From Wallemia ichthyophaga EXF-994 (lineage: Eukaryota > Fungi > Basidiomycota), in NCBI RefSeq assembly GCF_000400465.1, contig NW_008806277.1, positions 150,001 to 182,000 of the forward strand: DNA of 32,000 nt. Direction: 5' to 3'. The translations under genes and the position numbers were made by a program. Positions 3,825-24,536 of the stretch are shown here, one piece after another (within the stretch, counting starts at the first letter, position 1; each line of letters begins with the position of its first letter). Below the pieces are notes generated by a model, which was given only the letters and a program-made list of their open reading frames with translations, did not search any database and was not told where the DNA came from.

Positions 3825-5649
3825 TTACTTGCTACCAGGCAACTTGTCGCCTTGTTGTGGAATATGTGTGAAAGCGCCTTTTGCAAACCACTTATCATTC
3901 GCCGCTTTGAGTTTACGCTCATTCTCGGCGTTTTGATTAGGATTAGCCAACTCAATACCCTGGAATGGAGTAATGGACAGACTAGACGCAGTACCACTAG
4001 TTGCTGTTCCTGAAGTTGCCTTCGATGGACCACCTAGCAATTGAGTGCGAATTTTATTTTGTTTGCTCATTTTAGCTCTACTTTTAGAATCAATTGCACT
4101 AGCTCTCAATTTACCAGATTCTTTGCCCAGCATACCGAGACCTCTAGTCTCACCACCGAAAGCATCAGTCTCTTGCTCTTGTTCACCAAATTTGACGCGG
4201 TTGCTGAGTTGACGGAGCTCTGTCATACCATATGCTTCCTTAGCTTTACGTGCTCTTCTTCCACCCCTCCTCTTCTTCTTTCCGTCTTCGGATGGTACTG
4301 GAAGTGCTTTTGTTACTTTCAAAGGAGGAGGTTCAGCCATTTTTTCGAAATGCTTTTCTAGTTTAGTTCTTAGCATATCTCCGTAGTTGCCTTCTTTGCT
4401 ACCACCCTCGAGGTCCACTCTAGCGGCTAAGACCACCTTACCGGAAACAGTGCGCTGAGCTTTAAGCTTGTGTTCTGGTTCGCAAGACTGCACAAGATCA
4501 GACTGGAAAATGAAACCAGTATGTCTGTTCATAGTTGCTGTGGATTGGCCTGTCGGTGTCTTCTTCATAGCACCTAGGAGGTAGACATTACACGAAGGCA
4601 TCTTAGCTAAAGCTTGCAGACCACCCGCTACACCTATCAGCTTTGCTGCGGTTGTCGTACCAACGATAGCAGACACGTTGGGCGAGAGTATATTCATACG
4701 CGACTGAACATATTCGAATATCTGAAGGTAGTGAGTGAGTGTGAGTGTGAGTGTGGTGAAGTAATGCAAATATATTCACCTTCCGTTTGGCATCTTCTAG
4801 CTCTTTGTGCACTTGACATGCAGCGTCTACTCTGTGCCACTCGTCGTGCGATAATTGACGACCATCTGCAGTTGTAGCGCTGACAGTAATGACCATGATA
4901 GTATGGCCTTTAACGACATCCTTCAGTGGAGCTTGTGAAATGTCTTGCAAGTTTCCAATAGCTTGTACAACGCGTAAGTAGACTGTAGGTTCTGGTACGA
5001 GAGTGTCTAGACCGGGAAACTTAGCGTGATAGTGATCTCTAACGAATTTGTGTACGATGAGAAGCTCATTATCAACCTCGACAGCTAAATTGTTAGCTTT
5101 AACGATGATATCGTATTCAGGGTTATCGGCGAGTGAACCACCTTTGACAAGCTTTGGGTGAAGGAGGAATTCGTCAATGCCCTGATGATTTGTTAGTGAG
5201 TTGTAAAAGGATAGACTGGTGACTCACCTCAAGTACGTCTTTCATGCGCTTTGAGGATGTTAGAGGTGCTACTTTCCTGACATCTAGAACCTTTTCAAGC
5301 TTGAAGCCTTCAACAGCTTCTGCATCAAGCTCATCTGCTGGTCTGACACCACCTGTTGGTACGTATAGCTGACCATCCTGGAGTTGTACCTGGTTTGGAT
5401 CTTTGGGTTGGTCATCTTGATCCATTTTCACATCGTCCTGATCAGCTCTTAGTGGGGATATTGCTGATCTTTTGCCATTTCCATTTGTGGTTGTGGTTGT
5501 GGCAGTGGCAGTGTCTTCTCCAGTGGCATCTTCACCGGCATCACCGGTTTCTTCATCAGATAAGCCATCTAGATCGTCGATAAGCTCTTGTGCGAGTGAC
5601 TGATAGGCTGTTAGGTGGTTTAATCGGTAAAAGCGCTGAGACAGACCAT
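3825..5649 (-). CDS. PRP31: U4/U6.U5 tri-snRNP splicing factor Prp31 (~557 aa)
   Basis: [19 protein letters not shown]-terminus, NOP domain ([21 protein letters not shown]), [15 protein letters not shown] and [14 protein letters not shown]. Exons 5649-5647 (ATG only), 5599-5228, 5181-4780 and 4721-3825 sum to 1674 nt. Confidence 0.93.
4731..4756. repeat. Short (GTGA/GT)-type microsatellite inside PRP31 intron 3
   Basis: gtgagtgagtgtgagtgtgagtgtgg lies within the 4722-4779 intron. Confidence 0.6.
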
Positions 5650-6153
5650 CAAGAACGATCGATGATGAAAGTTCGGGACCAAAGATAATCAGAGATAGCG
5701 GGAAGGGGGAGTGATTGATGAGATGTAGTTTATTCAAGTCCTCGTGGTCGTTTCAATAACCCTAATCAATAGGATATCAATGGCATTGAGATGATTAAAG
5801 TTATAGACACAAACTAACAACGTAGATTGATGTTATTTAGTTTTGTAATGTATATCTATCAATATTTTTACAAAATCCGCGCCGAATAAAGCCAAAAAGT
5901 AGCATCGGAGATAATCGCGTTTATTTGAGGTACGCGGGTAATAAAGGGTATTTTGAGGGGAATGGAGGTGGATTAGAGGTGAATTCGAGTATAAATACGT
6001 AATTTCTAAGTAATACATTGTAATTTATAATCAATGGTATCCAAAATCCAGTCAAATGATATTCAAATGACGTTATTACGACGCCAAAAGCGTATTAACG
6101 AAGGGAATGAGAGCAAAATTGGGATAAGTATGGTTTAATAGAGGCTGGTATTG

Positions 6154-6187
6154 TATAAAACTCAAAACCAATCTCCCCCGAACAAAT
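6154..6187 (+). promoter_or_regulatory. TATA-like element and CCAAT box matching the CSAAT-N12-RWT CBC/HapX motif upstream of aconitase
   Basis: TATAAAA at 6154-6160; CCAAT at 6168-6172, a 12-nt spacer, then AAT at 6185-6187, about 60-90 nt before the ACO1 ATG. The motif is short and could occur by chance. Confidence 0.3.
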
Positions 6188-6246
6188 TACATAAACACTG
6201 AAATTTGATTCGTGAGGCTCAAACTTGTTTCATTAAAACATCCAAC

Positions 6247-8783
6247 ATGTTCTCACGCGGTGTAAGAAACTTGCGGCAATTCGCCACCCAAGCCAAACGT
6301 ATTGGTGATCAGAAGGTGGATATGTCCTTGATGTGAGTACTTGAGTATTCCTTGGTCGCTGATCCTGATCTCACTCCAAATCCAGCGAAGCAGGTCAAGG
6401 CAAGTACATTAATTACCAAGTGAGTTTCGTTTGAATCTAGTAAGAATCCCCGCTTACTCATTTACAGCGCATCGAAGACAACCTCAACGTTGTTCGTTCT
6501 CGGTGAGATTTACCGTAGCCGTCTAACCAATCAAATCTTACCAATTACCAGCCTCAATCGTCCTCTCACTCTCTCCGAGAAGATCGTCTACGGCCACTTG
6601 GACAACCCAGAAGAACAAGATATCGAAAGAGGAAAGTCTTACCTGAAGCTTCGTCCGGATGTGAGCAACTCAGCCAATCAGATGTTCTTAATTTCTAACC
6701 CGTTTTACAGCGCGTTGCTTGCCAAGATGCTACTGCTCAAATGGCTCTCCTTCAATTCATGTCTGCTGGTCTCCCAACCACAGCTGTACCAACTACCGTC
6801 CACTGTGATCACTTGATCGAGGCTCAAGTTGGCGGTGTTGCCGACTTGGCCCGTGCCAACGACCTCAACAAAGAAGTTTTCGACTTCTTGTCAACCGCTA
6901 CTCAGAAGTACGGTATTGGCTTCTGGAAGCCTGGTTCTGGTATCATTCACCAAATCGTTCTTGAAAACTACGCCACTCCTGGTTTACTCATGATTGGTAC
7001 TGACTCCCACACTCCAAACGCCGGTGGTCTCGGTATGGTTGCCGTGGGTGTTGGTGGTGCTGACGCTGTTGACGTCATGGCAAACCTCCCATGGGAATTA
7101 AAGTGTCCAAAGGTTATCGGTGTTAAGCTTGAAGGTAAAATGAGTGGTTGGACTACTCCAAAAGATATCATTCTCAAGGTCGCTGGTATTCTCACCGTTA
7201 AAGGTGGTACCGGTGCTATCATCGAATACTTTGGTCCAGGTGTTGACTCGTTATCTTGCACTGGTATGGCAACCATCTGTAACATGGGTGCTGAAATTGG
7301 TGCTACCACCTCTCTCTTCCAATTCAACGATCGTATGACTTCATACTTGACTGCAACTGGTCGTAAAGCTCAAGCTGACTACGCTAAACAATTCGCTCCA
7401 AACCTCGTACGTGACCAAGACGCTGAATACGATCAAACTATCACCATCGACCTTAACGAGCTTGAACCACACATCAATGGTCCATACACTCCTGATCTTG
7501 CAACTCCACTCTCTCAATTTGCTGGTGAAGTTAAGAAGAACAACTGGCCACAAGAACTCAAAGTTGCCTTGATCGGTTCATGTACTAACTCTTCATACGA
7601 GGACATGACTCGTTCAGCTTCTATCGCCAAGGAGGCACACGACGCTGGTTTGTCTGCCAAATCTAGATTCACAATCACTCCTGGTTCTGAGCAAATTCGT
7701 GCAACCATCTCTAGAGACGGTGTTATTGAGAACTTTGAAGAAGTTGGTGGTATCGTTCTTGCCAACGCATGTGGTCCATGTATCGGTCAATGGGATCGTC
7801 AAGATGTTAAGAAGGGTGAAGCAAACTCTATCATCACTTCTTACAACCGTAACTTTACTGGTCGTAACGATGCCAACCCAGGTACCCACGCCTTTGTTGC
7901 TTCCCCAGACCTTGTCACTGCCATGGCCTTCGCTGGTGATCTCACCTTCAACCCAATGAAGGACACCCTCAAGACTGAAGATGGCAAGGACTTTAGATTC
8001 TCCGACCCAGCTGGTTATGAACTTCCACCAAAAGGCTATACCGCTGGTGAGAATACCTTCCAACCACCATCAGAGCACCCAGAACAAGTTTCGGTCGCTG
8101 TTGATCCAAACTCACAACGTTTGCAACTTCTTGAGCCATTCGACAAGTGGAATGGTGAAGACCCACAAGATCTCCCAGTTCTTATCAAAACTCGTGGTAA
8201 GTGTACCACTGATCACATCTCAGCTGCTGGTCCATGGTTGAAATACAGAGGTCACTTGCAAAACATCTCACAAAACTGTCTGATTGGTGCAATTAACGAC
8301 GCCAATGGCAAGGCTAACTCTGTAGAGAACCTTGAGACTGGTGAGTGGGGCCCAGTTCCAACTGTTGGAGCTTGGTACCGTGACCACGGCATAAAGTGGG
8401 TTGTTGTTGGTGATAACAACTACGGTGAAGGATCATCTAGAGAACATGCCGCACTTGAGCCTCGCTACTTGGGTGGTACAGCTGTCATTACCAAGTCTTT
8501 TGCTCGTATTCACGAAGCCAACCTCAAAAAGCAAGGTATGCTTGCTCTCAACTTTAAGAACGAGGCAGACTACGATAAGGTGCAACCAAACGACAAGATC
8601 TCTTTGAAGGGTGTTAAGGACAACTTCCACCCAGGATCTGAGCTCACCATGGTATGCAAGCACAAGGATGGCTCTGTTGATGAGTTCCCATTAACACACA
8701 CATACAACCAAGAGCAGATCCAATGGTTCATCAACGGCTCAGCTCTTAACTTGATGAAGGCTCAAGCTGAGGGTAAGGCTTAA
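6247..8783 (+). CDS. ACO1: Mitochondrial aconitate hydratase
   Basis: Presequence-like [14 protein letters not shown]; [50 protein letters not shown] and [10 protein letters not shown] motifs. Four 5'-clustered introns: 6333-6385, 6420-6467, 6503-6551, 6661-6710. Confidence 0.97.
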
Positions 8784-8979
8784 AAGATGAACATAGTATA
8801 AGCGCATTAATCTGTTTTTCTAATTATTTACACTGATTTTACTTATTCTAACTTTGTATTGAATTATACACAAACAATATGTAACCTAAGAGCAGTTGTA
8901 TAGTGCGCAGTTTGTTATAAGATGAAAAGCGTGCAGTGTATTGTAAGATGAAAATATAGTGGTATCCTTCTATATTAAA

Positions 8980-10220
8980 TTACAGTAGAGTTTCCAGTCG
9001 AACACCTTGGTCTAGTACCCGCGACAGCTTAATAACGCGTTCCTTGAGAGAAAGTTGTCGCAAAGCCATTATTTTTTCTATTGCGTGAAGTTGAAATTTG
9101 AGTTTATGGGAAGCGGAAACCTTGATAGTGATAGCGGCAGCGGACAAAGACTCTAAGAAAGTCTTGAAGCATCTGTCATCCCGAGCGAAGACGTATGTGG
9201 GTATAGGTTCACCCTGTTGGTAGAAACATAGAACTTGTGACCAACAAGCCATCATGACTAGATCAGCTATACCATTACTGAGGTAGTCATCCAGACTGGC
9301 AATCGTAGATGCACTCTTATCTAATCTCCATGTAGCGAACTTTCTCAGTTCATCGGTTGCTGTTTGGACAGGTTTGCTGAGTTGAGGGTGGTTTAGAGCT
9401 GCTGCGACGAGTTGAGTAGCATCGTTGATGAATTTGTCGCCCTCTTTGGTGCGTCAGCGGGTGCTACTCGGAGAATCGCAAAACTTACCACTCATAACGA
9501 GAGTTTGGAGGTAGGAAGCGAGGAGATCAGTCTGTTGGTGGAGTGAGATAGGATTGAGATGTGCATATAGGCGAGCTACCTACCTGACCAGTTGACAAAC
9601 CATGATCAATGGCTAGTTTTAAGTTTGTTCTTAAACTCTTGAGTATATCGCGGTTTTCAGCGGTTTTGAGGGTGTTTTCATCCATAGTGTTAACCCATTT
9701 GGACATTGCACCGACGAGGACAATAGCGATACCGTCATACTCTTTACCAAGTCTCATAGCATGGACTAGTGGGGTAGTCCCGCCGACCTTCTTCAAAAGA
9801 AGTTGGAAGGAGTGATCACGGCATGTCATGATGAACATGATGTCCTTTGTTTCAATAGCTTTGAATAACTCCCAAGGCATCAAAGGTCGCTTTGGTTTGG
9901 TTGTAAGTTCACTCGATTTCTTTACAAGTTTCTTGCCAATTGGGCTGATTGAAGAGCCTTGTAAACTATTAGTCAACGCCTCATTTAAATTTGATTGCTG
10001 GTGCTTCACGGATATTTCACATTTGGATATAGCATCATACTCTAATGACTTGAGCGGCGGCAACTGCTTGGGAAGTGTATAGAGAGAAGGCAAAATATTA
10101 TTTATCTTATCAGGAATTGGATTGATAACTAATCTGCCGTCATCGATATCGTTATCTGGATTATCCAATAGATATTGATAGTTGGCCATTAACGAGTACT
10201 TCTTCACCGTCCACCATCAT
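8980..10220 (-). CDS. Uncharacterised protein (~363 aa) with a degenerate ankyrin-like segment
   Basis: Exons 10220-10208, 10155-9584, 9531-9489 and 9443-8980 sum to 1092 nt in one frame, with 45-52 nt GT-AG introns. Contains PWELFKAIETKD...GGTTPLVHAMRLG...LRTNLKLAID. The 5' exon is less certain; an alternative ATG lies at 10189. Confidence 0.75.
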
Positions 10221-12143
10221 GTACGATAAATTGAGACTGTAAGTTAATTCTATTAGATTATGTTAACTCCCTCATATCCATTGAACAGCCTGTCTTCCAA
10301 ACAAGCGTACACTCTCGAGCCTCTCAGTGGCACTGGACAGTCACTCACCATCGATAGAGCTACTCGTGAATTAAATCTAGTAAACTCGCCCAAGGATGTA
10401 CACAGTGATGTTGATAGCGTCATCACACTATACGGTATACTCGGTATTATTCACCTCTCCACTACTCCGTTCCTCATTGCTATCAGCGACCGTGAACTCG
10501 CTGGTACAATCAATGGCTGTGATGTTTACAGAGCCACTGACTTTAAAATGTTCCCTATAGACCGCTCTTCCACTCTGTCTGAAATCCTTAAACATCCCGT
10601 CGACGGTGTTTTACTAGGTCTACTCAAAGATCACTTTAGAGACGGTAACTTCTTCTTTTCTCATTCTTTCGACGTTACAAGCAGTTTACAGAGGCAGCAA
10701 CGACACAACCAAGGGCCACTCCATCACAGATCGGACGATCGCTTCTTTTGGAACAAGTTCCTTCAAATGCCTTTGCTGGAATCTGAGCTTGATCTCAGCA
10801 AATTTATCCTCCCTGTCATCTACGGCTTCCTCGAGATTAAGCCAACGAGTATCTTCGGTCAACCCCTCTCCATTACCCTGATTGCAAGAAGATGCAGATA
10901 CAGAGCAGGTACTCGTTATTTTAGCAGGGGTATAGATAGTCATGGAAATGTTTCAAATTTCAACGAAACTGAGCAGATTGTACAAATCGGCAATAATACT
11001 CTCTACTCACACGTACAATGCAGAGGTTCTGTGCCTATTTATTGGTCAGAGATCAACACTCTCAGATACAAGCCTGATCTTCAAATAATGGACTTACCTC
11101 AGATAACTGAGTCTCTCAGACTACACCTCAGCTCACTCGTTGACCACTATGGCAAGGTCACCTGCATCAACCTTGTCAATCAAAAGGGTTATGAAAAGCC
11201 AGTTAAGGAGTGGTTCGAAGCTGCGCTTGACAAGATTGACCACCCCAACACTGATTACTTGTACTTTGACTTCCACAGCGAATGCAGCAAGATGCGTTGG
11301 GACAGAATCCAGATCCTGATTGATCGCCTAGATGATGACCTAAAAGCACAAGGCTATTTCAAGAAGGATGCTCAAACCGTATCTAATACCCAACAGAGTG
11401 TCTTCAGAACCAACTGCATGGATTGTCTCGATCGCACCAATGTAGTACAGAGCGCAGTGGCTAGAGTTGTACTCACTGCACAGCTCGCTGACGCTAATTT
11501 GATCGGACCTAGCGATCAGCTCAGTGATGATATTGGATTCAATTATCTCTTCAGAAATATCTGGGCTGACCACGCAGATGCTGTCTCCGTCACTTACAGC
11601 GGCACGGGCGCACTCAAGACCGACTTCACCCGCACAGGTAGACGTACACTCCAAGGAGCGTTCTGGGATTTAGTCAACAGCATAACGAGGTACATTAAAA
11701 ACAATTACTACGACGGCAGTAGACAGGATGCGTTTGATTTTGTGCTCGGCGCTTGGTCACCTCGTGTGTCAAATCCACGTGCTGTGATCAAAGACGACAG
11801 GTCTGCAATAACGAAAGCCGTGCCTTATGTACTGACATATTCACTCCTCGTGCTCATTTCGGGTGTTGTGTTGCCGAAAGAGAGAGGAAGATCACTGCTT
11901 ACGTTCTACCTCCTCTTCTCTAACCTCGTCGCACTCTCGTCCGTGTACCTAGTCGCGAACGGCAGGGAGTACGTCGCATGGCCTAAACTCAACCCTCTAG
12001 ACAGTATCATCAACTATAAAGGACCGGGTTATAGAGGCGCCATGCACGGTAGAGGCTTCGCTTGGGGCGTTGGATCTAGCGGCTTGCGCAGCCAGAGTGC
12101 TTCCTCTGTCGATGAGATCGAGATGGGTAAGAAGGCTAGTTAG
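10219..12143 (+). CDS. SAC1: Phosphatidylinositol-4-phosphate phosphatase Sac1
   Basis: RYFSRGID, SHVQCRGSVP, catalytic RTNCMDCLDRTN (CX5R), YSGTGALKTDFTRTG and two C-terminal hydrophobic segments. Exon 1 10219-10238 (MYDKLRL), intron 10239-10288 (gtaagt...ttaac...cag), total 1875 nt. Confidence 0.95.
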
Positions 12144-13371
12144 TGTTGCTCCTTGTAAGCATGTATGCGATGCCCTTTGTTGTTTGTCTGTCTTTTGACT
12201 ACATATAAATGTCTTTTTCTTTCTATTTGGTTTGCTCAGCTCACCTCCCGAATTTAATGTCATGCTTTTGATCCAGAATTCAGGAATCGTGTGGTATTTG
12301 AGATTAAGACACTCTGATAACATTCTCGAGTCCTGAATGATACATCTTTATATCACTTCACGCTTATTCGCGGGCTTGATATACCTCACCGATGACTTCA
12401 AGACGTGTTTGTGAAATGAGAGGACACTTGAAGTATTTCTTTGGACTTTCAGACGCGTGTAGCAGTATAAATTATTCGATTAAATTGAATGTGCTCAAGG
12501 CACCCTAAAAATGACCAAGTGTACGCCATTAGCTGCGTGACTAGGAACGAGGGTATCCGGGTTCGTGAAACACAAAAACATAGAACGCTACAAAACGCTA
12601 GCAACAGTAAATCTAAAGAAAATCGTCAAAATCCTTGTGGAACTATAAGCTACATAATGATACCAATTGTTCGACTTCATGGTCGCGCACTCGTCAAACA
12701 TTTCATTTTTGGCCTGAAGGAGGAAAAGGTTAGCGAAGGGTTCAGCGTGTAGCTTTAAGACATTGTTTATATTCAAGAGCTAATGGCTAATGGCTAGACA
12801 ACCAATTAATCGTTGCTATTCAAATGACGTCGCAAATCATAGAGATAATGCGAAGAATTGCATAGTAAGGCGCCTTAGTGGTTTAAATGGAACAAAAGAG
12901 TGCTTCCAGCTGATCGCTCTTGCATGAGCCTAATCATGTAATCATCTACACATCATCTACGCGCATCATTGCAAAAATATTTGAGGATTACAAATGGTGA
13001 TTATTTGCAGTAAATTCTCAAACAATGTGTCCGAAATAAGCTGATGCCTTCCCTAGAAGTGAGTGGGCTGGAGCTATTTTTTATCAAACAATGCACTATC
13101 AACTGAAAAATGTAAAACAAATCCGAGACAGATTATTGAGTGTTATTAATAATTGTTGATAATTTTAACAATTATCTCATGTATACACTCTATGCAAATG
13201 CAATAAGTCGCTATTGTGTGGGGCGAGAGTGGGGGCAGACCTAAGAGCGTCTTTGTTTTCATCGTATTTCATAATTAAGCTTCATAAATTTTGCAACTGT
13301 GTAATATTATGCTCATGAAGTGAGATAGTATCTTTACTCGATCATTTCTCCCACTTACTTGAACCACCACC

Positions 13372-13983
13372 ATGCGACTTCAAGAACTACCACACGATGT
13401 TATTGTAGAAATTTTCAGCTAACTCGATGGTGACGACCGGTACATGCTACGCTTCTTCAGCAGTATTTTATACAACGCAATCCCAAAGTCGCAAGTGTTG
13501 ATGCTTACAGGGCCGCGTTCGAAATCCGTTGAATTCGTCACACTAGCCGAGGCAGATGAGTTGCTCTTCTTAAGCAACGTATTAAGGAACAAAAAAAAAC
13601 ATCGGAAAGAACAGTGTACGTCATCTGCCTTTAAAAAAAAAAGGCAGGCTAATTGTTTGTCGGGGGAGAAGAGCTCAAAGCTATACAAAAGAGTGTTAGA
13701 GCCATAAAGAATCGATAATTCCTCTATGCATGCCCGCCAGATGGCTCACAAAAGATATTACCGAGGTGTCTTGGATCCTCGTGAAAGATATTGCTCTACC
13801 ACGACCACACTTGAAGAATAATTCATCGCAGATGCAGATGAAGACGGATAGAGTGACAAATATATAGGCTAGTATATATACGTTGATTTAGATGAGATGT
13901 ATCACTTCGAAGTGATGGAATTGGAAGATGACTTACGAGAGCATTGCTTGGAGGATTTTGATGGTGATGTTTATTTTGACTGA
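13372..13983 (+). pseudogene. F-box protein pseudogene
   Basis: Frame opens with accaccaccATG and MRLQELPHDVIVEIFS*LDGDDRYMLRFFSSIL, an F-box pattern broken by TAA at 13420. The same frame has further stops at 13705, 13819, 13849 and 13870 and ends in an acidic tail with TGA at 13981-13983. Confidence 0.65.
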
Positions 13984-14140
13984 GTTTTAAACATCTTTGA
14001 TACCAAGTTTTGTCTTCATATCAAACCATGTTGTAGACAATTTGTAGATAATTTTAATGATTAGGGAGTAAAAAGTTATACATCTGTTTTTAGAATACAA
14101 TTATATATATCTCGTGCGGAGTGCGTTGTGGTATTTGACT

Positions 14141-15745
14141 TCAGATGACGCCATCTAGTTGATTAGCGAAATCAAAGTCGTCAAAGCTGTCACTGTGGTT
14201 ATCACTGGGGGTGTCTTTATCGAGGGAGTCAAGGTCGTCGGAGGTGTTGTCGGTTCTATGTCGCTTGGGAGTATCCGAGTTGGATTGGTTGTTAGTGTGA
14301 CTGTGCAAATCCTGCTCATCTATGCTTGGAGGTGTAGAACTCTTGCGAGATCTTTTCTTAGTGTTCTCTTTAACCTCCTCTCCTTTCTCTTCCTCGGCGC
14401 TGTCCTCATTAAGGAAATCTTCGAGCTCCTGATCGGCGGTATCCCAATCGACATGATCGGTAGTAGGTTTATCATTGAAACTTTGCACCTGTTTTGGCCA
14501 TTTAGGTCGAGAGTGTGAATCGAGATAGTAAGAATCCTCTTTACGACATTCCCACAAATTACACGAATCGATGAGCCACTGAGGGGTAACGACATGAGCG
14601 ACATCCTCCCGTCTCGCTTCGTCTACTTTAGCAGTACCCTTTTTAGCAGCGACGACGTGTGTGATGGCGGAGGAGTAGGTAGTGTGTACTTGTGCGCCAT
14701 ATCGCACGGCGAGGTGGTACAGAGGGCTGTGTTCGATGTGTGCACCGAGTGGGACGACTGCGCTGAATAACAAATGCACTCCGCGTAGCACTAGACGTTG
14801 CATGTGGGGGATTATCTCGGCGACGTCTGGATCATCGCCCGCGTTACGGTATGTGTAGTATGTAGAATGGATTTGGCGGAGAATGCGTAAAAGACGAGGG
14901 AGTTCAGCGTCGGGAGTGCGAGAGAGGAGTTGACGATGCTCCCTTTGTCGCTGGGCGAGTGGACGTTGATTGGCTTGTTGGGAGAGAGAGAGGTTGTGGT
15001 GATCACGATGGTCACTATCCTCACCCCCCTTCTCGCCAACCTCTTCATCAAAGTGAACCTCCTCCTCACCGGCGTTTATATCACCTATACCAACGAAGAA
15101 TTCAAAAGGGTTGCATTTGACAAGGTTTGGAGAATCAGACCAGACATCAGCGCGGTCATCGATAATGACACACATGGAAGTGTCGGTGGGGAAGAGGCGG
15201 AGGAGGGATTTAGAGGTGAAGCTACCAGAGTCATCGCGGGTGAGGATACGTTCAGAGAATAAGGAGCCGGTGGGGTCAATAAGTTGACATACTGCAGCAG
15301 CGTAAGACTTGGTTCCCATAGTGTAGACGTGTAGTTCGTATAGGTGGTTGAGTTCATGTAGGAAATCGATCAAACCGGGTCTGAATTTGACAAAGTAGGA
15401 GCAGCTTTGATTGAGAGGAGTGAAGTCATCTAATTTGAACTTGTGAATGTCGTCTAAGGCACCAGGATAGACCAAGGAAGGATCATCCAACCAGGATTGA
15501 ACAGTTGGGTCAACAGTGGCGTGAATTACAGTCTGATCGAGATCGACGATTAAGCTGAGCTTGGATGATTTTAATAGGGAATGCTTTGAGCGTGTGGAAA
15601 TCCGTTTAGCTTCGTCGTAGGTGACGGTGAGATTTGCGGTGGAGTGGGAGATGTGAAGAGAGTTGTTTACAGTGGAAGTAATATCTATACCACAGACAGC
15701 ACATAAACCAGCTAATTGTACAGGATGTGTACATGGATCAGACAT
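14141..15745 (-). CDS. FCP1: RNA polymerase II CTD phosphatase Fcp1
   Basis: N-terminal CTHP...GLCAVCG, HAD motif LIVDLDQTVIHAT, KFRPG, IIDDRADVW, a BRCT domain (THVVAAKKGTAK, WLIDSCNLW) and an acidic tail. Intronless, 534 aa. Confidence 0.95.
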   Translation of the reverse strand: MSDPCTHPVQLAGLCAVCGIDITSTVNNSLHISHSTANLTVTYDEAKRISTRSKHSLLKSSKLSLIVDLDQTVIHATVDPTVQSWLDDPSLVYPGALDDIHKFKLDDFTPLNQSCSYFVKFRPGLIDFLHELNHLYELHVYTMGTKSYAAAVCQLIDPTGSLFSERILTRDDSGSFTSKSLLRLFPTDTSMCVIIDDRADVWSDSPNLVKCNPFEFFVGIGDINAGEEEVHFDEEVGEKGGEDSDHRDHHNLSLSQQANQRPLAQRQREHRQLLSRTPDAELPRLLRILRQIHSTYYTYRNAGDDPDVAEIIPHMQRLVLRGVHLLFSAVVPLGAHIEHSPLYHLAVRYGAQVHTTYSSAITHVVAAKKGTAKVDEARREDVAHVVTPQWLIDSCNLWECRKEDSYYLDSHSRPKWPKQVQSFNDKPTTDHVDWDTADQELEDFLNEDSAEEEKGEEVKENTKKRSRKSSTPPSIDEQDLHSHTNNQSNSDTPKRHRTDNTSDDLDSLDKDTPSDNHSDSFDDFDFANQLDGVI

Positions 15746-15787
15746 GGTTGTTGGTTAAATAGGAACATTCAAGTAAAATTGAAGGAA

Positions 15788-16077
15788 ATGGAGAAATTAG
15801 AAGTCAATGATGGCCAAGAGAGGGTTGGTGGGTGGGTGGTATTAGAAATATTCTAATCTCACCAACCACAGCAAATCTCCTCAATAATCTCGATAAGGAT
15901 AAGAAGCAGGAGGAGTTTAGGAGAGGTGGTGGTTTGCCTGAATCTAGTGCATTAGACAGGGTGAAGGAGTTTCTGCCTGAGATGAAAAAATCCAATGAAA
16001 GTACGTTAAAGAGTATGGAGGATGTGGGTGAAGAGGATAAGCATATAGAGATGAATATATATAAACCATCTATTTGA
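15788..16077 (+). CDS. Small NOPCHAP1/C12orf45 (DUF4598)-like protein, putative box C/D snoRNP assembly chaperone
   Basis: ATG at 15788 and intron 15828-15871 (gtgggt...ctaat...cag) give MEKLEVNDGQERVANLLNN...SSALDRVKEFLPEMKKSN...IEMNI. This resembles the remembered family pattern, but the protein is short. Confidence 0.6.
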
Positions 16078-22050: not shown

Positions 22051-22634
22051 TTACTCCATATATCCCTCCAAAACCCTCTCAATATGCGTATAGAGAAGAC
22101 CATCTGTGATATCATGCAATTGCTCCGGTGAGAGATTAGAAAGGACATATCTAGCAACATCGCGCTTATCACCTGGTCTACCAATACCAATTCGTAGTCT
22201 ATCAAAGTCGAGGGATTGTTTGAGATACTGTGAGAGTGATTTGATGCCGTTATGACCGTTGGCCGATCCGCCATGTTTGATGGAGAGCTGTTAACAGTTT
22301 GTGAGTGTGTGCGTATATGTATTCTCACCACACTACGCACCTTCCCCCATTCCCGCTGCAGGTCATCATGCAAGACGAGTACACGGCGTGCGTTGACATG
22401 CTCGCAGTAGCGTGCCAGGCTTTTTCCACAGACGTTCATCAGCTGGTGGCTGTATATGAGGTCTGTGTGGCTGTTTATATGCGTGTAGCTGACTCCGTGC
22501 TTGGTGTTGCTGTTCCACTGCAGATGTCGCCGCTGGGCTAAGTGCTTAAGGACGAGCTGGCCCACTGAGTGGAATGTGCGCGGGTGCGTCGCATTGCCTA
22601 AGCCTGCAATTACGGTTTTCTCGGCTGTGGGCAT
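22051..22634 (-). CDS. PTH1: Peptidyl-tRNA hydrolase, bacterial Pth1 type (176 aa)
   Basis: IAGLGN, VLHDDL, GGSANGHNGIKS and RLRIGIGRP motifs after splicing intron 22288-22340 (gtgcgt...ttaac...cag). TAA at 22053-22051. Confidence 0.9.
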
Positions 22635-22669
22635 ATTCACCGTCTTCACCGCCAACACCCACCACCAAT

Positions 22670-24536
22670 ATGGCAGCGCTCGATGCTGACTTTATAAGAT
22701 TTGACGGGAGCGACGGGAGCGACGAGGAGATCAGCGGGAATAAGAGGACTTATGAAGATGTGGAGGGTGGTGTCGGCAATTCAGCCACTCCAGCGACCAC
22801 TTCCACCACTTGCACACCTTCCAAACACCCAAAAGGCGAAAATGGGAAATCTAGGAAAGAAATCGAAAAACAGCGTTCAAAGAAAGCGCCCTGGATGGCA
22901 GACGTTGATTGGGAAGGCTGTCGAACAGCACCAGAGATGTGAGTTTCAAGTTGAAGTTTTTCAGGTTGAAACTCACCACTTACATCACTCCCACTCCCCC
23001 AGGCTACACAGAGAAGTAGACGCTTTCACTCGCTTTATCAGCCCTTCGGTTATCGAACACAAGACACGCGAGTACACCATAGAGTGCATACGCAGGTGCA
23101 TCACCTCTAGATGGTCCGATGCCCATGTCTTTGCTTTCGGCAGCTTCGAAACTCGTCTCTACCTCCCCGATGGCGATATAGATCTTGTCGTTATGCGCAA
23201 ATCAGTCAACCAATACAACAAACAGTCAATGCTACACACCATGGCCAGTATTCTCCGCCAAGCAAACCTCGCACAGAGTATACAAGTCATTTCTAAAGCC
23301 AGAGTGCCTATTATTAAGTTCCAGTCATCATTCGGTGGTTATCCCATTGATATCTCACTTAATCAGACAAACGGTGTGGATGCGGGGAGGATGGTGAACG
23401 ATATCCTCGACAAGTACCCCGCTGCTAGACCCCTTTCCATTCTCCTCAAATGCTTCCTCGCTCAACGCAGCATGAACGAGGTCTATACCGGCGGCGTCAG
23501 CTCGTATGCTGTCATATGTCTCGTCGTCAGCTTTTTACAGATGCATCCTAAAGTGAGGCGAGGTGACATCGACCCTCTCAACAATCTCGGTGTACTTATT
23601 GTCGATCTGCTCGAACTTTATGGAAGGAATTTTAACTACGATAACACCGGCATCGCTATTGAGGGATCTGGCTACTACTTCTCCAAGTCAAGTAGAGGTT
23701 GGCATCAGTATGGCCAGCCGTACCTCCTTTGCATACAGGATCCACAGGATGTCGGCAATGACATCAGCAAAGGCTCGTTCAATATACTCAACGTGCGCAA
23801 GGTGATCGCCGGTGCATACGATATGCTCACCAATAAACTTTACGCTCAGGCAAGTGAAATTGACGCTAAGAAGACCGGCCGCCATCTCAGTCTTAGAGAT
23901 GAAGTGGAAGTGAAGGATGAAGAGAAGAGTTTGCTGTTGAGTTTTATGGGTATTTCTCAACTCGTGCTGAATAAGAGGAGAGTTACAATTGATCTCTATC
24001 AGAAGGGTATCCTCCAGCGCTATCTGAATCTACCACCCCCTGAAAAAGACGTGGATTTGAGCGTGAAGAGCGTGCCGAATAGAGTGTCGAATGGAACTAG
24101 TGCGGTAAATGATAGTAGCCCAATTAAACCCAAACATAAGGTATTCCCTGAGGACGACGAGGGTGAAGGTGACAACAGCGTAATTGACATACTCGATAAG
24201 GATAGAGAGGATGATGACTCGCGCTATTTACACGTACAAGCCAGTAGATCGGGATCTAACAAGCGTCCGCGCAGCAAAATCAGTAAGACGGATAAAGCAC
24301 CGACGTCTCAACTCCATTTCGTTGATTCATCGGAAGACTCCGATGTGGAGATTGTAGAGAAGACAGATAAACAGGCAGGCACACGTGGCACGCGGGAGCA
24401 AAGCAAGCAAACCAAAAAAAGTCAACCAGAACGACCAGTGAAAAAACAGAGACGTGAATCAAACGAACAAAGAAACTCAAGGTACGAGTACTGGGGGAAA
24501 AAAGGCAAGTCTATAGATATATCAGACAGTAACTAG
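22670..24536 (+). CDS. TRF4: Non-canonical poly(A) polymerase Trf4/PAPD5 (TRAMP complex)
   Basis: APWM...MLHREVDAF after intron 22939-23002; nucleotidyltransferase motif FGSFETRLYLPDGDIDLV, KARVPIIKF, NEVYTGGVSSY, IQDPQD and NDISKGS. Confidence 0.92.

What the first reader, a model, noticed from the sequence alone, without database searches (positions are those of the whole stretch)
10156..10288. Two divergent genes whose start codons overlap in a single CATG palindrome
At 10218-10221 the sequence CATG can be read as the ATG of SAC1 (+, 10219-10221) and the ATG of the uncharacterised gene (-, 10220-10218; a second in-frame ATG at 10217). Each predicted first exon is tiny (20 and 13 nt) and is followed by a typical 50-52 nt intron that restores frame. 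There is no intergenic DNA, so each gene's promoter and 5' UTR must lie within the partner's first exon, intron and coding sequence, making the 5' ends mutually antisense. Even with the fallback starts (10189 on -, 10260 on +) the ATGs are only about 70 nt apart.
Basis: partly seen in the sequence, partly recalled or inferred. Interest (0 to 1): 0.72.

Follow-up and report, generated by a model that had tools for sequence, protein, structure and literature searches.

The report
Head-to-head genes 29 bases apart
In this compact genome of the salt-loving fungus Wallemia ichthyophaga, SAC1 and an uncharacterised neighbour point away from each other with start codons 29 bases apart, not overlapping in one CATG; this spacing is ordinary for the genome and already in the public annotation.

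Summary
The letters are as described: CATG at 10218-10221, ATGs on both strands, and GT..AG pairs of 50 and 52 nt that restore frame.

SAC1 starts at 10219. Its 20-nt first exon (MYDKLRL) and phase-2 intron (10239-10288) are conserved in three other Wallemia species, and the exon adds 9 bits to a basidiomycete SAC1 N-terminal profile.

The minus-strand gene starts at 10189 (MANYQY...). That methionine aligns with residue 1 of orthologues in three Wallemia species and 13 Agaricomycotina orthologues. The proposed 13-nt exon and 52-nt intron would delete these conserved codons, add no profile score, and use a donor (GTGAAG) lacking the +5 G found in all nine verified introns.

So 29 nt of spacer (10190-10218) exist. 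GenBank models for strain EXF-994 already show exactly this.

Spacers this short are common here: 29, 42 and about 35 nt among five divergent pairs in the window. The adjacency is specific to W. ichthyophaga, because its relatives carry another gene in between.

How both genes are transcribed from so little DNA (tiny leaders or overlapping 5' ends) could not be tested.

Interest is low.

The parts
10218..10221 (.). CATG palindrome. Its + strand ATG (10219-10221) is the SAC1 start codon. Its - strand ATG (10220-10218) is only an out-of-frame upstream ATG for the minus gene.
10219..10238 (+). SAC1 exon 1, 20 nt, encoding MYDKLR plus the first two bases of Leu7.
   Evidence: The window exons reproduce the 624-aa GenBank protein exactly (P0140, EOR02776.1). 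The exon is conserved in W. mellicola, W. hederae and an unnamed Wallemia. It adds 9.1 bits to an N-terminal profile built from 115 basidiomycete SAC1 proteins.
10239..10288 (+). SAC1 intron 1: 50 nt, phase 2, GTAAGT...TTAAC...ACAG. It contains an in-frame ATG at 10260, which the 627-aa gene models of some strains use.
   Evidence: Without splicing, the reading from 10219 stops after 7 codons. The intron sits at the same position and phase in L001, L003 and L004. The ATG-10260 N-terminus adds 0 bits to the profile.
10289..12143 (+). SAC1 exon 2, including the stop codon. It carries the Syja_N/SAC domain, with the CMDCLDRTN catalytic motif visible in the translation.
10190..10218 (.). 29-nt spacer between the two start codons (TAACGAGTACTTCTTCACCGTCCACCATC). 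Its last 9 nt (10210-10218) align in register with the first three codons of SAC1 in other Wallemia species.
9584..10189 (-). Exon 1 of the uncharacterised conserved basidiomycete gene (370 aa; J056_003337 in strain EXF-994). The start codon is at 10189-10187 (MANYQYLLDNP...).
   Evidence: The window exons reproduce P0145 exactly. The start aligns with residue 1 in three other Wallemia species. M1 is invariant and N3 is at least 90% conserved across 14 orthologues.
8980..9583 (-). Rest of the minus gene: intron 9583-9532 (GTAGGT..ACAG, 52 nt), exon 9531-9489, intron 9488-9444 (GTAAGT..AAAG, 45 nt), and exon 9443-8980 including the stop.
10156..10207 (-). It is not an intron: it comprises 18 nt of spacer plus codons 1-11 and the first base of codon 12 of the gene.
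   Evidence: The spliced model MMVDD... scores -0.7 bits, against +9.9 bits for the unspliced start. Its donor GTGAAG has A at +5, whereas all 9 verified Wallemia introns seen here have G.
10161..10220 (-). Potential upstream ORF (MMVDGEEVLVNGQLSISIG*). It would be read only if the minus-gene mRNA begins upstream of 10220. It overlaps the real start out of frame.
   Evidence: Whether it is ever transcribed is unknown.

Best explanation
The window comes from Wallemia ichthyophaga, a basidiomycete with a 9.6-Mb genome of which about 73% is coding.

The locus is a head-to-head pair of ordinary protein-coding genes.
- SAC1, a phosphoinositide phosphatase, starts at 10219. It has a conserved 20-nt first exon and a 50-nt phase-2 intron.
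- The second gene encodes a conserved basidiomycete protein of unknown function (370 aa). Its N-terminal tail is predicted disordered and the rest is all-helical. It starts at 10189 and has no 5' intron.
- The start codons are 29 nt apart. The CATG is incidental: its minus-strand ATG is an out-of-frame upstream ATG.

Inferred, not shown: 29 nt cannot hold two core promoters and two normal leaders, so each gene's promoter must use DNA that the partner transcribes or translates.
- The minus gene most likely has a very short leader, with its transcription start inside 10190-10216. A longer leader would include two upstream ATGs, one of them in strong context, opening a 19-codon ORF that runs past the real start.
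- The SAC1 leader may extend into the first codons of the minus gene. That stretch has no + strand ATG for about 170 nt, is AT-rich, and encodes the disordered tail.
- In that case the two 5' ends would overlap in antisense by some tens of bases.

Also inferred: the adjacency arose in the W. ichthyophaga lineage. Relatives carry another gene between the pair, and the SAC1 start codon has moved three codons downstream in this species.
For: Species and public models:
- The window encodes proteins 100% identical to W. ichthyophaga ones.
- GenBank models for EXF-994 are EOR02776.1 (624 aa, MYDKLRLLSSKQ) and EOR02775.1 (370 aa, MANYQY). Window exons with starts at 10219 and 10189 reproduce both exactly.
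- In two other strains the annotated CDS ends are 9971 and 10001, a 29-nt gap.

SAC1 start:
- The first exon and the phase-2 intron occur at the same position in W. mellicola, W. hederae and a Wallemia sp. assembly.
- Against a profile of 115 basidiomycete N-termini, the spliced model scores 61.8 bits, no N-terminus scores 52.7, and the ATG-10260 model scores 52.6.
- Without splicing, the reading from 10219 stops after 7 codons.
- The 1875-nt model GME1167_g is expressed at RPKM 94-111 (PMC3849046 Table S4).

Minus gene start:
- M-x-N-[YF]-[QE]-[HY]-L is conserved from residue 1 in three other Wallemia species.
- M1 is invariant across 14 orthologues.

The arrangement is common here:
- Divergent CDS gaps in this region are 117, 611, 29 and 42 nt.
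- A further pair appears to be about 35 nt apart.
- The 42-nt pair is 18 nt apart in W. mellicola and 45 nt apart in W. hederae.
- CDS makes up 73.6% of the genome.

Leader inference:
- The uORF is confirmed by translation.
- Upstream ATGs in both directions are listed.
- GC is 0.28-0.34 over 10100-10175.
- Residues 1-40 of the minus protein are predicted disordered.

Lineage specificity:
- An NmrA-like gene lies between the pair in W. hederae and in L004. An arylsulfotransferase lies there in W. mellicola.
- The window holds no NmrA remnant.
- The start-codon shift is visible in the alignment.
Against: No transcript-level data could be examined, so transcription start sites, leader lengths and any antisense overlap are inference only.

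Expression of the minus gene (GME1166) could not be read. The stored copy of the expression table is cut at about RPKM 68.5 (30% NaCl) and does not hold the gene, and it is absent from the differential-expression list.

Depletion of upstream ATGs near starts rests on only 23 gene starts.

The EXF-994 models are GeneMark-ES predictions rather than RNA-based, and some strain annotations use ATG 10260 for SAC1.

The direction of the synteny change (loss in W. ichthyophaga or gain in its relatives) is not resolved.
Confidence: 0.85

Rival explanations
1. Both genes initiate in the CATG. The minus gene has a 13-nt first exon (MMVD..) and a 52-nt intron (10207-10156), so there is no intergenic DNA.
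For: The ATGs, the GT..AG pair and the frame restoration do exist. The second upstream ATG (10217) has A at -3 and G at +4.
Against: - The 'intron' would remove codons conserved from residue 1 in three other Wallemia species and in Agaricomycotina orthologues.
- The spliced N-terminus adds no profile score (44.0 bits against 54.6 for the unspliced start).
- Nothing comparable lies upstream of the orthologues.
- The donor GTGAAG lacks the +5 G present in 9 of 9 verified introns, and no CTRAC-like branch site lies near the acceptor.
- Such mechanical solutions occur for 11 of 42 long ORFs.
- No public model uses it.
Confidence: 0.03
2. SAC1 is mainly translated from ATG 10260 (627 aa, MLTPSYPLNS...). 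The transcript either starts downstream of 10219 or retains intron 1. In the second case MYDKLRL* would be a 7-codon uORF.
For: Several strain annotations, and the model matching this window, use this start (P0001, P0143). The ATG is in frame with exon 2. Intron retention is the commonest form of alternative splicing in this species (PMC3849046). L004 also has an in-frame ATG in this intron.
Against: - Exon 1 and the intron position are conserved in four Wallemia species.
- The encoded h-[HY]-x-[RK]-L-x-L motif is general in basidiomycete SAC1 and adds 9.1 bits, whereas MLTPSYPLNS adds nothing.
- The intronic ATG is absent from W. hederae and W. mellicola.
- It remains possible as a minor isoform.
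Confidence: 0.07
3. The minus gene is losing function. After the rearrangement removed its upstream DNA, it is poorly expressed or not expressed, and the tight spacing is tolerated for that reason.
For: Its protein evolves about four times faster in W. ichthyophaga than in W. hederae: 31 lineage-unique changes against 8 (p = 2e-4). SAC1 shows 49 against 45. It is not among the roughly 2000 most expressed genes at 30% NaCl.
Against: - The three-exon ORF is intact and encodes the same 370-aa protein as public W. ichthyophaga models from several strains.
- The columns that are invariant across the family were computed with this protein included, so it retains them all.
- The model is confident over residues 100-370.
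- Other equally tight pairs include plainly essential genes, such as FCP1-like and Pth.
Confidence: 0.08

Closest known systems
Head-to-head (bidirectional) gene pairs sharing one short promoter region, as described in yeasts and other compact fungal genomes (from general knowledge)
   Same: Two divergently oriented protein-coding genes with 5' ends far closer than 1 kb. One nucleosome-free region presumably serves both.
   Different: The ATG-to-ATG distance is only 29 nt, far below typical yeast divergent spacers of several hundred bp. The promoter DNA must therefore be coding or intronic DNA of the partner. No transcription start data exist here.
Overlapping transcription in compacted eukaryotic genomes, such as microsporidia and nucleomorphs (Williams et al. 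2005, from memory; that title turns up in the text of PMC3629993)
   Same: Very high gene density with intergenic spacers too short for normal UTRs and promoters, so transcripts are expected to run into neighbouring genes.
   Different: Wallemia is a free-living basidiomycete with normal intron density (2.4 per gene). Overlap of the transcripts is not demonstrated here.
Public annotation of W. ichthyophaga EXF-994: J056_003337 (EOR02775.1) and J056_003338 (EOR02776.1)
   Same: Identical proteins and identical exon structure to what I derive from the window. The 29-nt CDS gap is seen in annotated strain assemblies.
   Different: Some other strain annotations, including the model matching this window, start SAC1 at the intronic ATG 10260 (627 aa). 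The comparative evidence argues against that model.
Inhibitory upstream ORFs that overlap a main start codon (from general knowledge)
   Same: ATGs at 10220 and 10217 open a 19-codon ORF that runs past ATG 10189 out of frame.
   Different: It is not known whether any mRNA contains it. Nothing similar lies at the same place in the orthologues, though short uORFs occur there.

Membership tests
SAC1-type phosphoinositide phosphatase (Pfam PF02383, Syja_N) | A SAC domain detected by the family profile | tested here: met
   PF02383 is precomputed for the window protein and for all 120 listed homologues, many of which their sources name SAC1 or phosphoinositide phosphatase.
SAC1-type phosphoinositide phosphatase (Pfam PF02383, Syja_N) | The catalytic CX5R(T/S) motif | tested here: met
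   CMDCLDRTN is present in the translation (RTNCMDCLDRTNVVQ). The motif definition is taken from general knowledge.
SAC1-type phosphoinositide phosphatase (Pfam PF02383, Syja_N) | The conserved N-terminal strand motif of basidiomycete SAC1 (h-[HY]-x-[RK]-[LF]-x-[LM]) | tested here: met
   It is present only in the spliced model that starts at 10219, where it adds 9.1 bits.
   The + strand ATG is supported. The - strand ATG is not: the conserved start is at 10189, and the spliced model scores -0.7 bits relative to having no N-terminus.
Spliceosomal intron (the proposed minus-strand intron 10207-10156) | Splice signals like those of verified introns in the same genus, and removal that does not delete conserved coding sequence | tested here: not met
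   The donor is GTGAAG, whereas 9 of 9 verified introns have G at +5. The proposed intron covers the conserved codons 1-11.
Bidirectional (head-to-head) gene pair | Divergent orientation with 5' ends less than 1 kb apart | tested here: met
   The CDS starts at 10189 (-) and 10219 (+) are separated by a 29-nt gap.
Bidirectional (head-to-head) gene pair | Transcription start sites mapped, and co-regulation or a shared promoter shown | not testable with these tools
   No read-level RNA data were available. Only RPKM for SAC1 (94-111) could be recovered, and the row for the minus gene is missing from the stored table.
5'-overlapping natural antisense transcript pair | Transcripts from both strands covering the same bases | not testable with these tools
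   This is inferred only from spacer length and the distribution of upstream ATGs.

The most novel reading that the evidence does not exclude
A deletion or rearrangement in the W. ichthyophaga lineage removed the gene and all promoter DNA between the two genes. Coding DNA now serves as promoter:
- The AT-rich first 30-40 codons of the minus gene, which encode a disordered tail, would drive SAC1.
- SAC1 exon 1 and intron 1 would drive the minus gene.
- The two mRNAs would overlap head-to-head.

The event would have left three traces: the SAC1 start shifted three codons downstream, the minus protein evolving about four times faster, and perhaps a short shared element (TCTTCACCG) recurring in ultra-short divergent spacers as a compact core-promoter motif.
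Probability: 0.25. Interest if true: 0.45.

Novelty: already known. Interest (0 to 1): 0.15.

Why it matters
The claim of two start codons sharing one palindrome does not hold, so nothing exceptional remains at this site.

What remains is a useful annotation point. SAC1 in this strain should start at 10219 with a 20-nt first exon, not at the intronic ATG 10260. The neighbour should start at 10189.

It is also a reminder that in Wallemia many divergent genes have start codons only 20-45 nt apart. How RNA polymerase II promoters and leaders fit into such spacers in a free-living, intron-rich basidiomycete has, as far as I could find, not been mapped. That question applies to the whole genome rather than to this locus.

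Tried and rejected
- Remnant of the intervening gene: a tblastn search of the NmrA-like protein from L004 against the window found nothing.
- RNA genes: Rfam and tRNA scans of the whole window found none.
- Identity of the minus protein: no Pfam family (only TetR_C_28 at E = 0.1), no PDB sequence match, and no Foldseek PDB match with E <= 0.001 for a decent AF2 model. The function remains unknown.
- Expression of the minus gene from Zajc et al. Table S4: the stored file is truncated and the row is absent. The gene numbering had to be inferred from CDS lengths (GME1165, 1167 and 1169).
- Spliced transcripts in Logan assemblies: the Logan members of the two protein clusters are unspliced genomic ORFs, so no transcript evidence came from there.
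- Conserved promoter motif upstream of SAC1: aligning four species showed little conservation upstream of the coding region.
- Shared 9-mer TTCACCGTC in two short spacers: P is about 0.0075 per pair by shuffling. One-mismatch copies are enriched in coding DNA, probably from codon bias, and the 9-mer is absent from the loci of the other three Wallemia species. I did not adopt it as evidence.
- GC profile: the junction is AT-rich, but the whole minus gene is too, so this is not decisive.
- Intronic ATG 10260 as a conserved alternative start: it is present in 2 of 4 species only, so I rejected it as a conserved feature.
Full report
**What is in the sequence.**
The stretch reads ...gttggCCATtaacgagtacttcttcaccgtccaccatCATGtacgataaattgagactGTAAGT....
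- CATG occupies 10218-10221.
- On the + strand, ATG 10219 is followed by 20 nt, then GTAAGT...ACAG at 10239-10288 (50 nt).
- On the - strand, ATGs at 10220 and 10217 are followed by GTGAAG...CCAG at 10207-10156 (52 nt).
- The fallback ATGs at 10189 (-) and 10260 (+) head long ORFs.

**Origin of the window.**
The + ORF is a SAC-domain protein. Its best matches are Wallemia proteins: 100% to an unnamed window-encoded entry, 77% to W. hederae and 70% to W. mellicola. The - ORF matches a W. ichthyophaga hypothetical protein at 100%. Two W. ichthyophaga strain assemblies align with window 219-22141 at 99.85-99.97% identity and are identical around the junction. W. ichthyophaga has a 9.6-Mb genome in which 73.6% is CDS, with a mean intron length of 61 bp (PMC3849046).

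**SAC1 start.**
- The 90% cluster of the window protein holds two kinds of model: 624 aa starting MYDKLRLLSSKQ (including EOR02776.1 of strain EXF-994) and 627 aa starting MLTPSYPLNS.
- Window exons 10219-10238 and 10289-12143 reproduce the 624-aa protein exactly.
- Without splicing, the reading from 10219 stops after seven codons.
- In W. mellicola (L001), W. hederae (L003) and a Wallemia sp. assembly (L004), the gene starts MS[FI][ILV]HDKLRL. A phase-2 intron interrupts it at the same place, after the second base of the last Leu codon.
- An HMM of the first 70 residues of 115 basidiomycete SAC1 proteins gives 61.8 bits to the spliced N-terminus, 52.7 bits to no N-terminus and 52.6 bits to the ATG-10260 N-terminus.
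- The motif h-[HY]-x-[RK]-L-x-L is general in this family.

The 1875-nt model (GME1167_g) is expressed at RPKM 94-111.

**Minus gene start.**
- Public models (EOR02775.1 and strain models, 370 aa) start MANYQY, which is ATG 10189.
- Window exons 10189-9584, 9531-9489 and 9443-8980 reproduce the protein exactly.
- tblastn aligns it from residue 1 in all three other Wallemia loci, whose ORFs start MPNYEHL, MHNYQHL and MHNFEHL. Their upstream DNA shows nothing like the proposed micro-exon.
- Across 14 orthologues, 13 of them from Agaricomycotina, M1 is invariant and N3 is at least 90% conserved.
- The proposed intron would delete MANYQYLLDNP.
- Its donor GTGAAG has A at +5, whereas the nine introns verified here all have G at +5. 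These are three in the window and SAC1 introns 1 and 2 in each of three species.
- A mechanical 'upstream ATG plus frame-restoring GT..AG' can be found for 11 of 42 long ORFs.

So the minus-strand half of the finding is a chance construct. From ATG 10220 the unspliced reading is a 19-codon ORF (MMVDGEEVLVNGQLSISIG*) that overlaps the true start out of frame.

**Corrected anatomy.**
The start codons lie at 10189 (-) and 10219 (+), with a 29-nt spacer at 10190-10218. The annotated strain assemblies show the same 29-nt gap (8762-9971 minus, 10001-11925 plus).

**Is it unusual?**
Not here.
- In the same 22 kb, annotated divergent CDS gaps are 117, 611, 29 and 42 nt.
- The 42-nt pair (FCP1-like and an 81-aa gene; window 15745 and 15788) also carries a CATG at its minus start.
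- That pair is 18 nt apart in W. mellicola and 45 nt apart in W. hederae.
- A further pair appears to be 35 nt apart: peptidyl-tRNA hydrolase at ATG 22634 and a Cid1/Trf4-like nucleotidyltransferase at ATG 22670. The Pfam Pth domain begins at residue 8 of the ORF from 22634. The start of the + gene in this pair is my own reading.

**Evolution of the adjacency.**
- In W. hederae and in L004, an NmrA-like gene on the minus strand lies between the orthologues. In W. mellicola an arylsulfotransferase gene lies there.
- The window holds no trace of NmrA.
- W. hederae is the sister species of W. ichthyophaga (PMC6738226). The direct adjacency is therefore specific to W. ichthyophaga, although whether it arose by loss or by gain elsewhere is not formally resolved.
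- In register, tcc acc atc ATG TAC GAT in the window aligns with ATG AGC ATC ATA CAC GAC in W. hederae. The SAC1 start moved three codons downstream (ATA/TTA/GTA to ATG) and the ancestral ATG was lost.
- The minus protein is accelerated in W. ichthyophaga: 31 lineage-unique changes against 8 (p = 2e-4). SAC1 is not: 49 against 45.

**How it probably works (inference).**
Twenty-nine nt cannot hold two core promoters and two ordinary leaders.
- On the minus strand, any leader longer than 27 nt would carry the ATGs at 10217 and 10220. The one at 10217 has A at -3 and G at +4, and the real start has T at -3. Both open a uORF that passes the real start, which argues for a very short leader.
- On the + strand there is no ATG for about 170 nt upstream of 10219. 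The stretch 10100-10175 has GC of 0.28-0.34, and it encodes a predicted disordered tail (pLDDT below 50 for residues 1-40). The SAC1 leader and promoter can therefore lie inside the first codons of the minus gene.
- In 23 Wallemia gene starts, upstream ATGs are depleted only within 25 nt of the start. The sample is small.

None of this was tested with transcript data.

**The minus protein.**
It has no Pfam family, no PDB sequence match and no significant fold match. Residues 100-370 form a confident all-helical domain.

**Verdict.**
The corrected arrangement is already in GenBank and is typical of this compact genome. Interest is low.

Noticed in passing
window 10260-12143 (627-aa model) versus 10219-10238 plus 10289-12143: Gene models for SAC1 differ between W. 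ichthyophaga strains (624 aa against 627 aa). In the three W. ichthyophaga sequences compared (the window, L005, L006) the DNA around the junction is identical. The 627-aa models start at an ATG inside intron 1 and miss the conserved 20-nt first exon.
   Followed up: yes
window 15743-15790 and 22632-22672: Two more head-to-head pairs have very short start-to-start spacers. The FCP1-like gene and an 81-aa gene are 42 nt apart, again with a CATG at the minus start. Peptidyl-tRNA hydrolase and a Cid1/Trf4-like nucleotidyltransferase are about 35 nt apart; the start of that + gene is my reading only.
   Followed up: partly
window 10203-10211 and 22636-22653: The exact 9-mer TTCACCGTC occurs only twice in the window, both times in the + orientation inside ultra-short divergent spacers. 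The second site has a tandem near-copy, TTCACCGCC. The chance of a shared 9-mer is about 0.0075 per spacer pair. It is absent from the loci of the other three Wallemia species and from the 42-nt spacer. It is unexplained and may be coincidence.
   Followed up: partly
window 8980-10189 (-): The uncharacterised 370-aa protein evolves about four times faster in W. ichthyophaga than in W. hederae (31 lineage-unique substitutions against 8 in exon 1, p = 2e-4). The neighbouring SAC1 shows equal rates. The family is conserved in Basidiomycota and has no Pfam, PDB or fold match. Its N-terminus is disordered and the rest is an all-helical domain.
   Followed up: partly
L003 4679-5945, L004 4110-5240, L001 3326-6000: Relatives carry a gene between the two orthologues: an NmrA-like gene in W. 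hederae and a Wallemia sp., and an arylsulfotransferase in W. mellicola. W. ichthyophaga has none. In the W. hederae annotation, the NmrA-like gene and the 370-aa orthologue are fused into one 733-aa model, which looks like an annotation error.
   Followed up: partly
window 10210-10221: The SAC1 start codon in W. ichthyophaga corresponds to codon 4 (Ile/Leu/Val) of the N-terminus in other Wallemia species. The ancestral ATG position now reads TCC, so the protein is three residues shorter.
   Followed up: yes
window ~10370-10385, compared with L001 ~6185-6240, L003 ~6135-6190 and L004 ~5430-5485: The other three Wallemia species have a second SAC1 intron, after ...K[LM]V. W. ichthyophaga lacks it, so its SAC1 has only the one 5' intron.
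   Followed up: no
window 12144-14140: About 2 kb downstream of SAC1 carries no annotated gene and no long ORF, and its GC is low (0.39-0.41). It has no Rfam or tRNA hit and no similarity to the corresponding gap in W. hederae. The same interval is only 74 nt in W. mellicola. This is odd in so compact a genome.
   Followed up: partly
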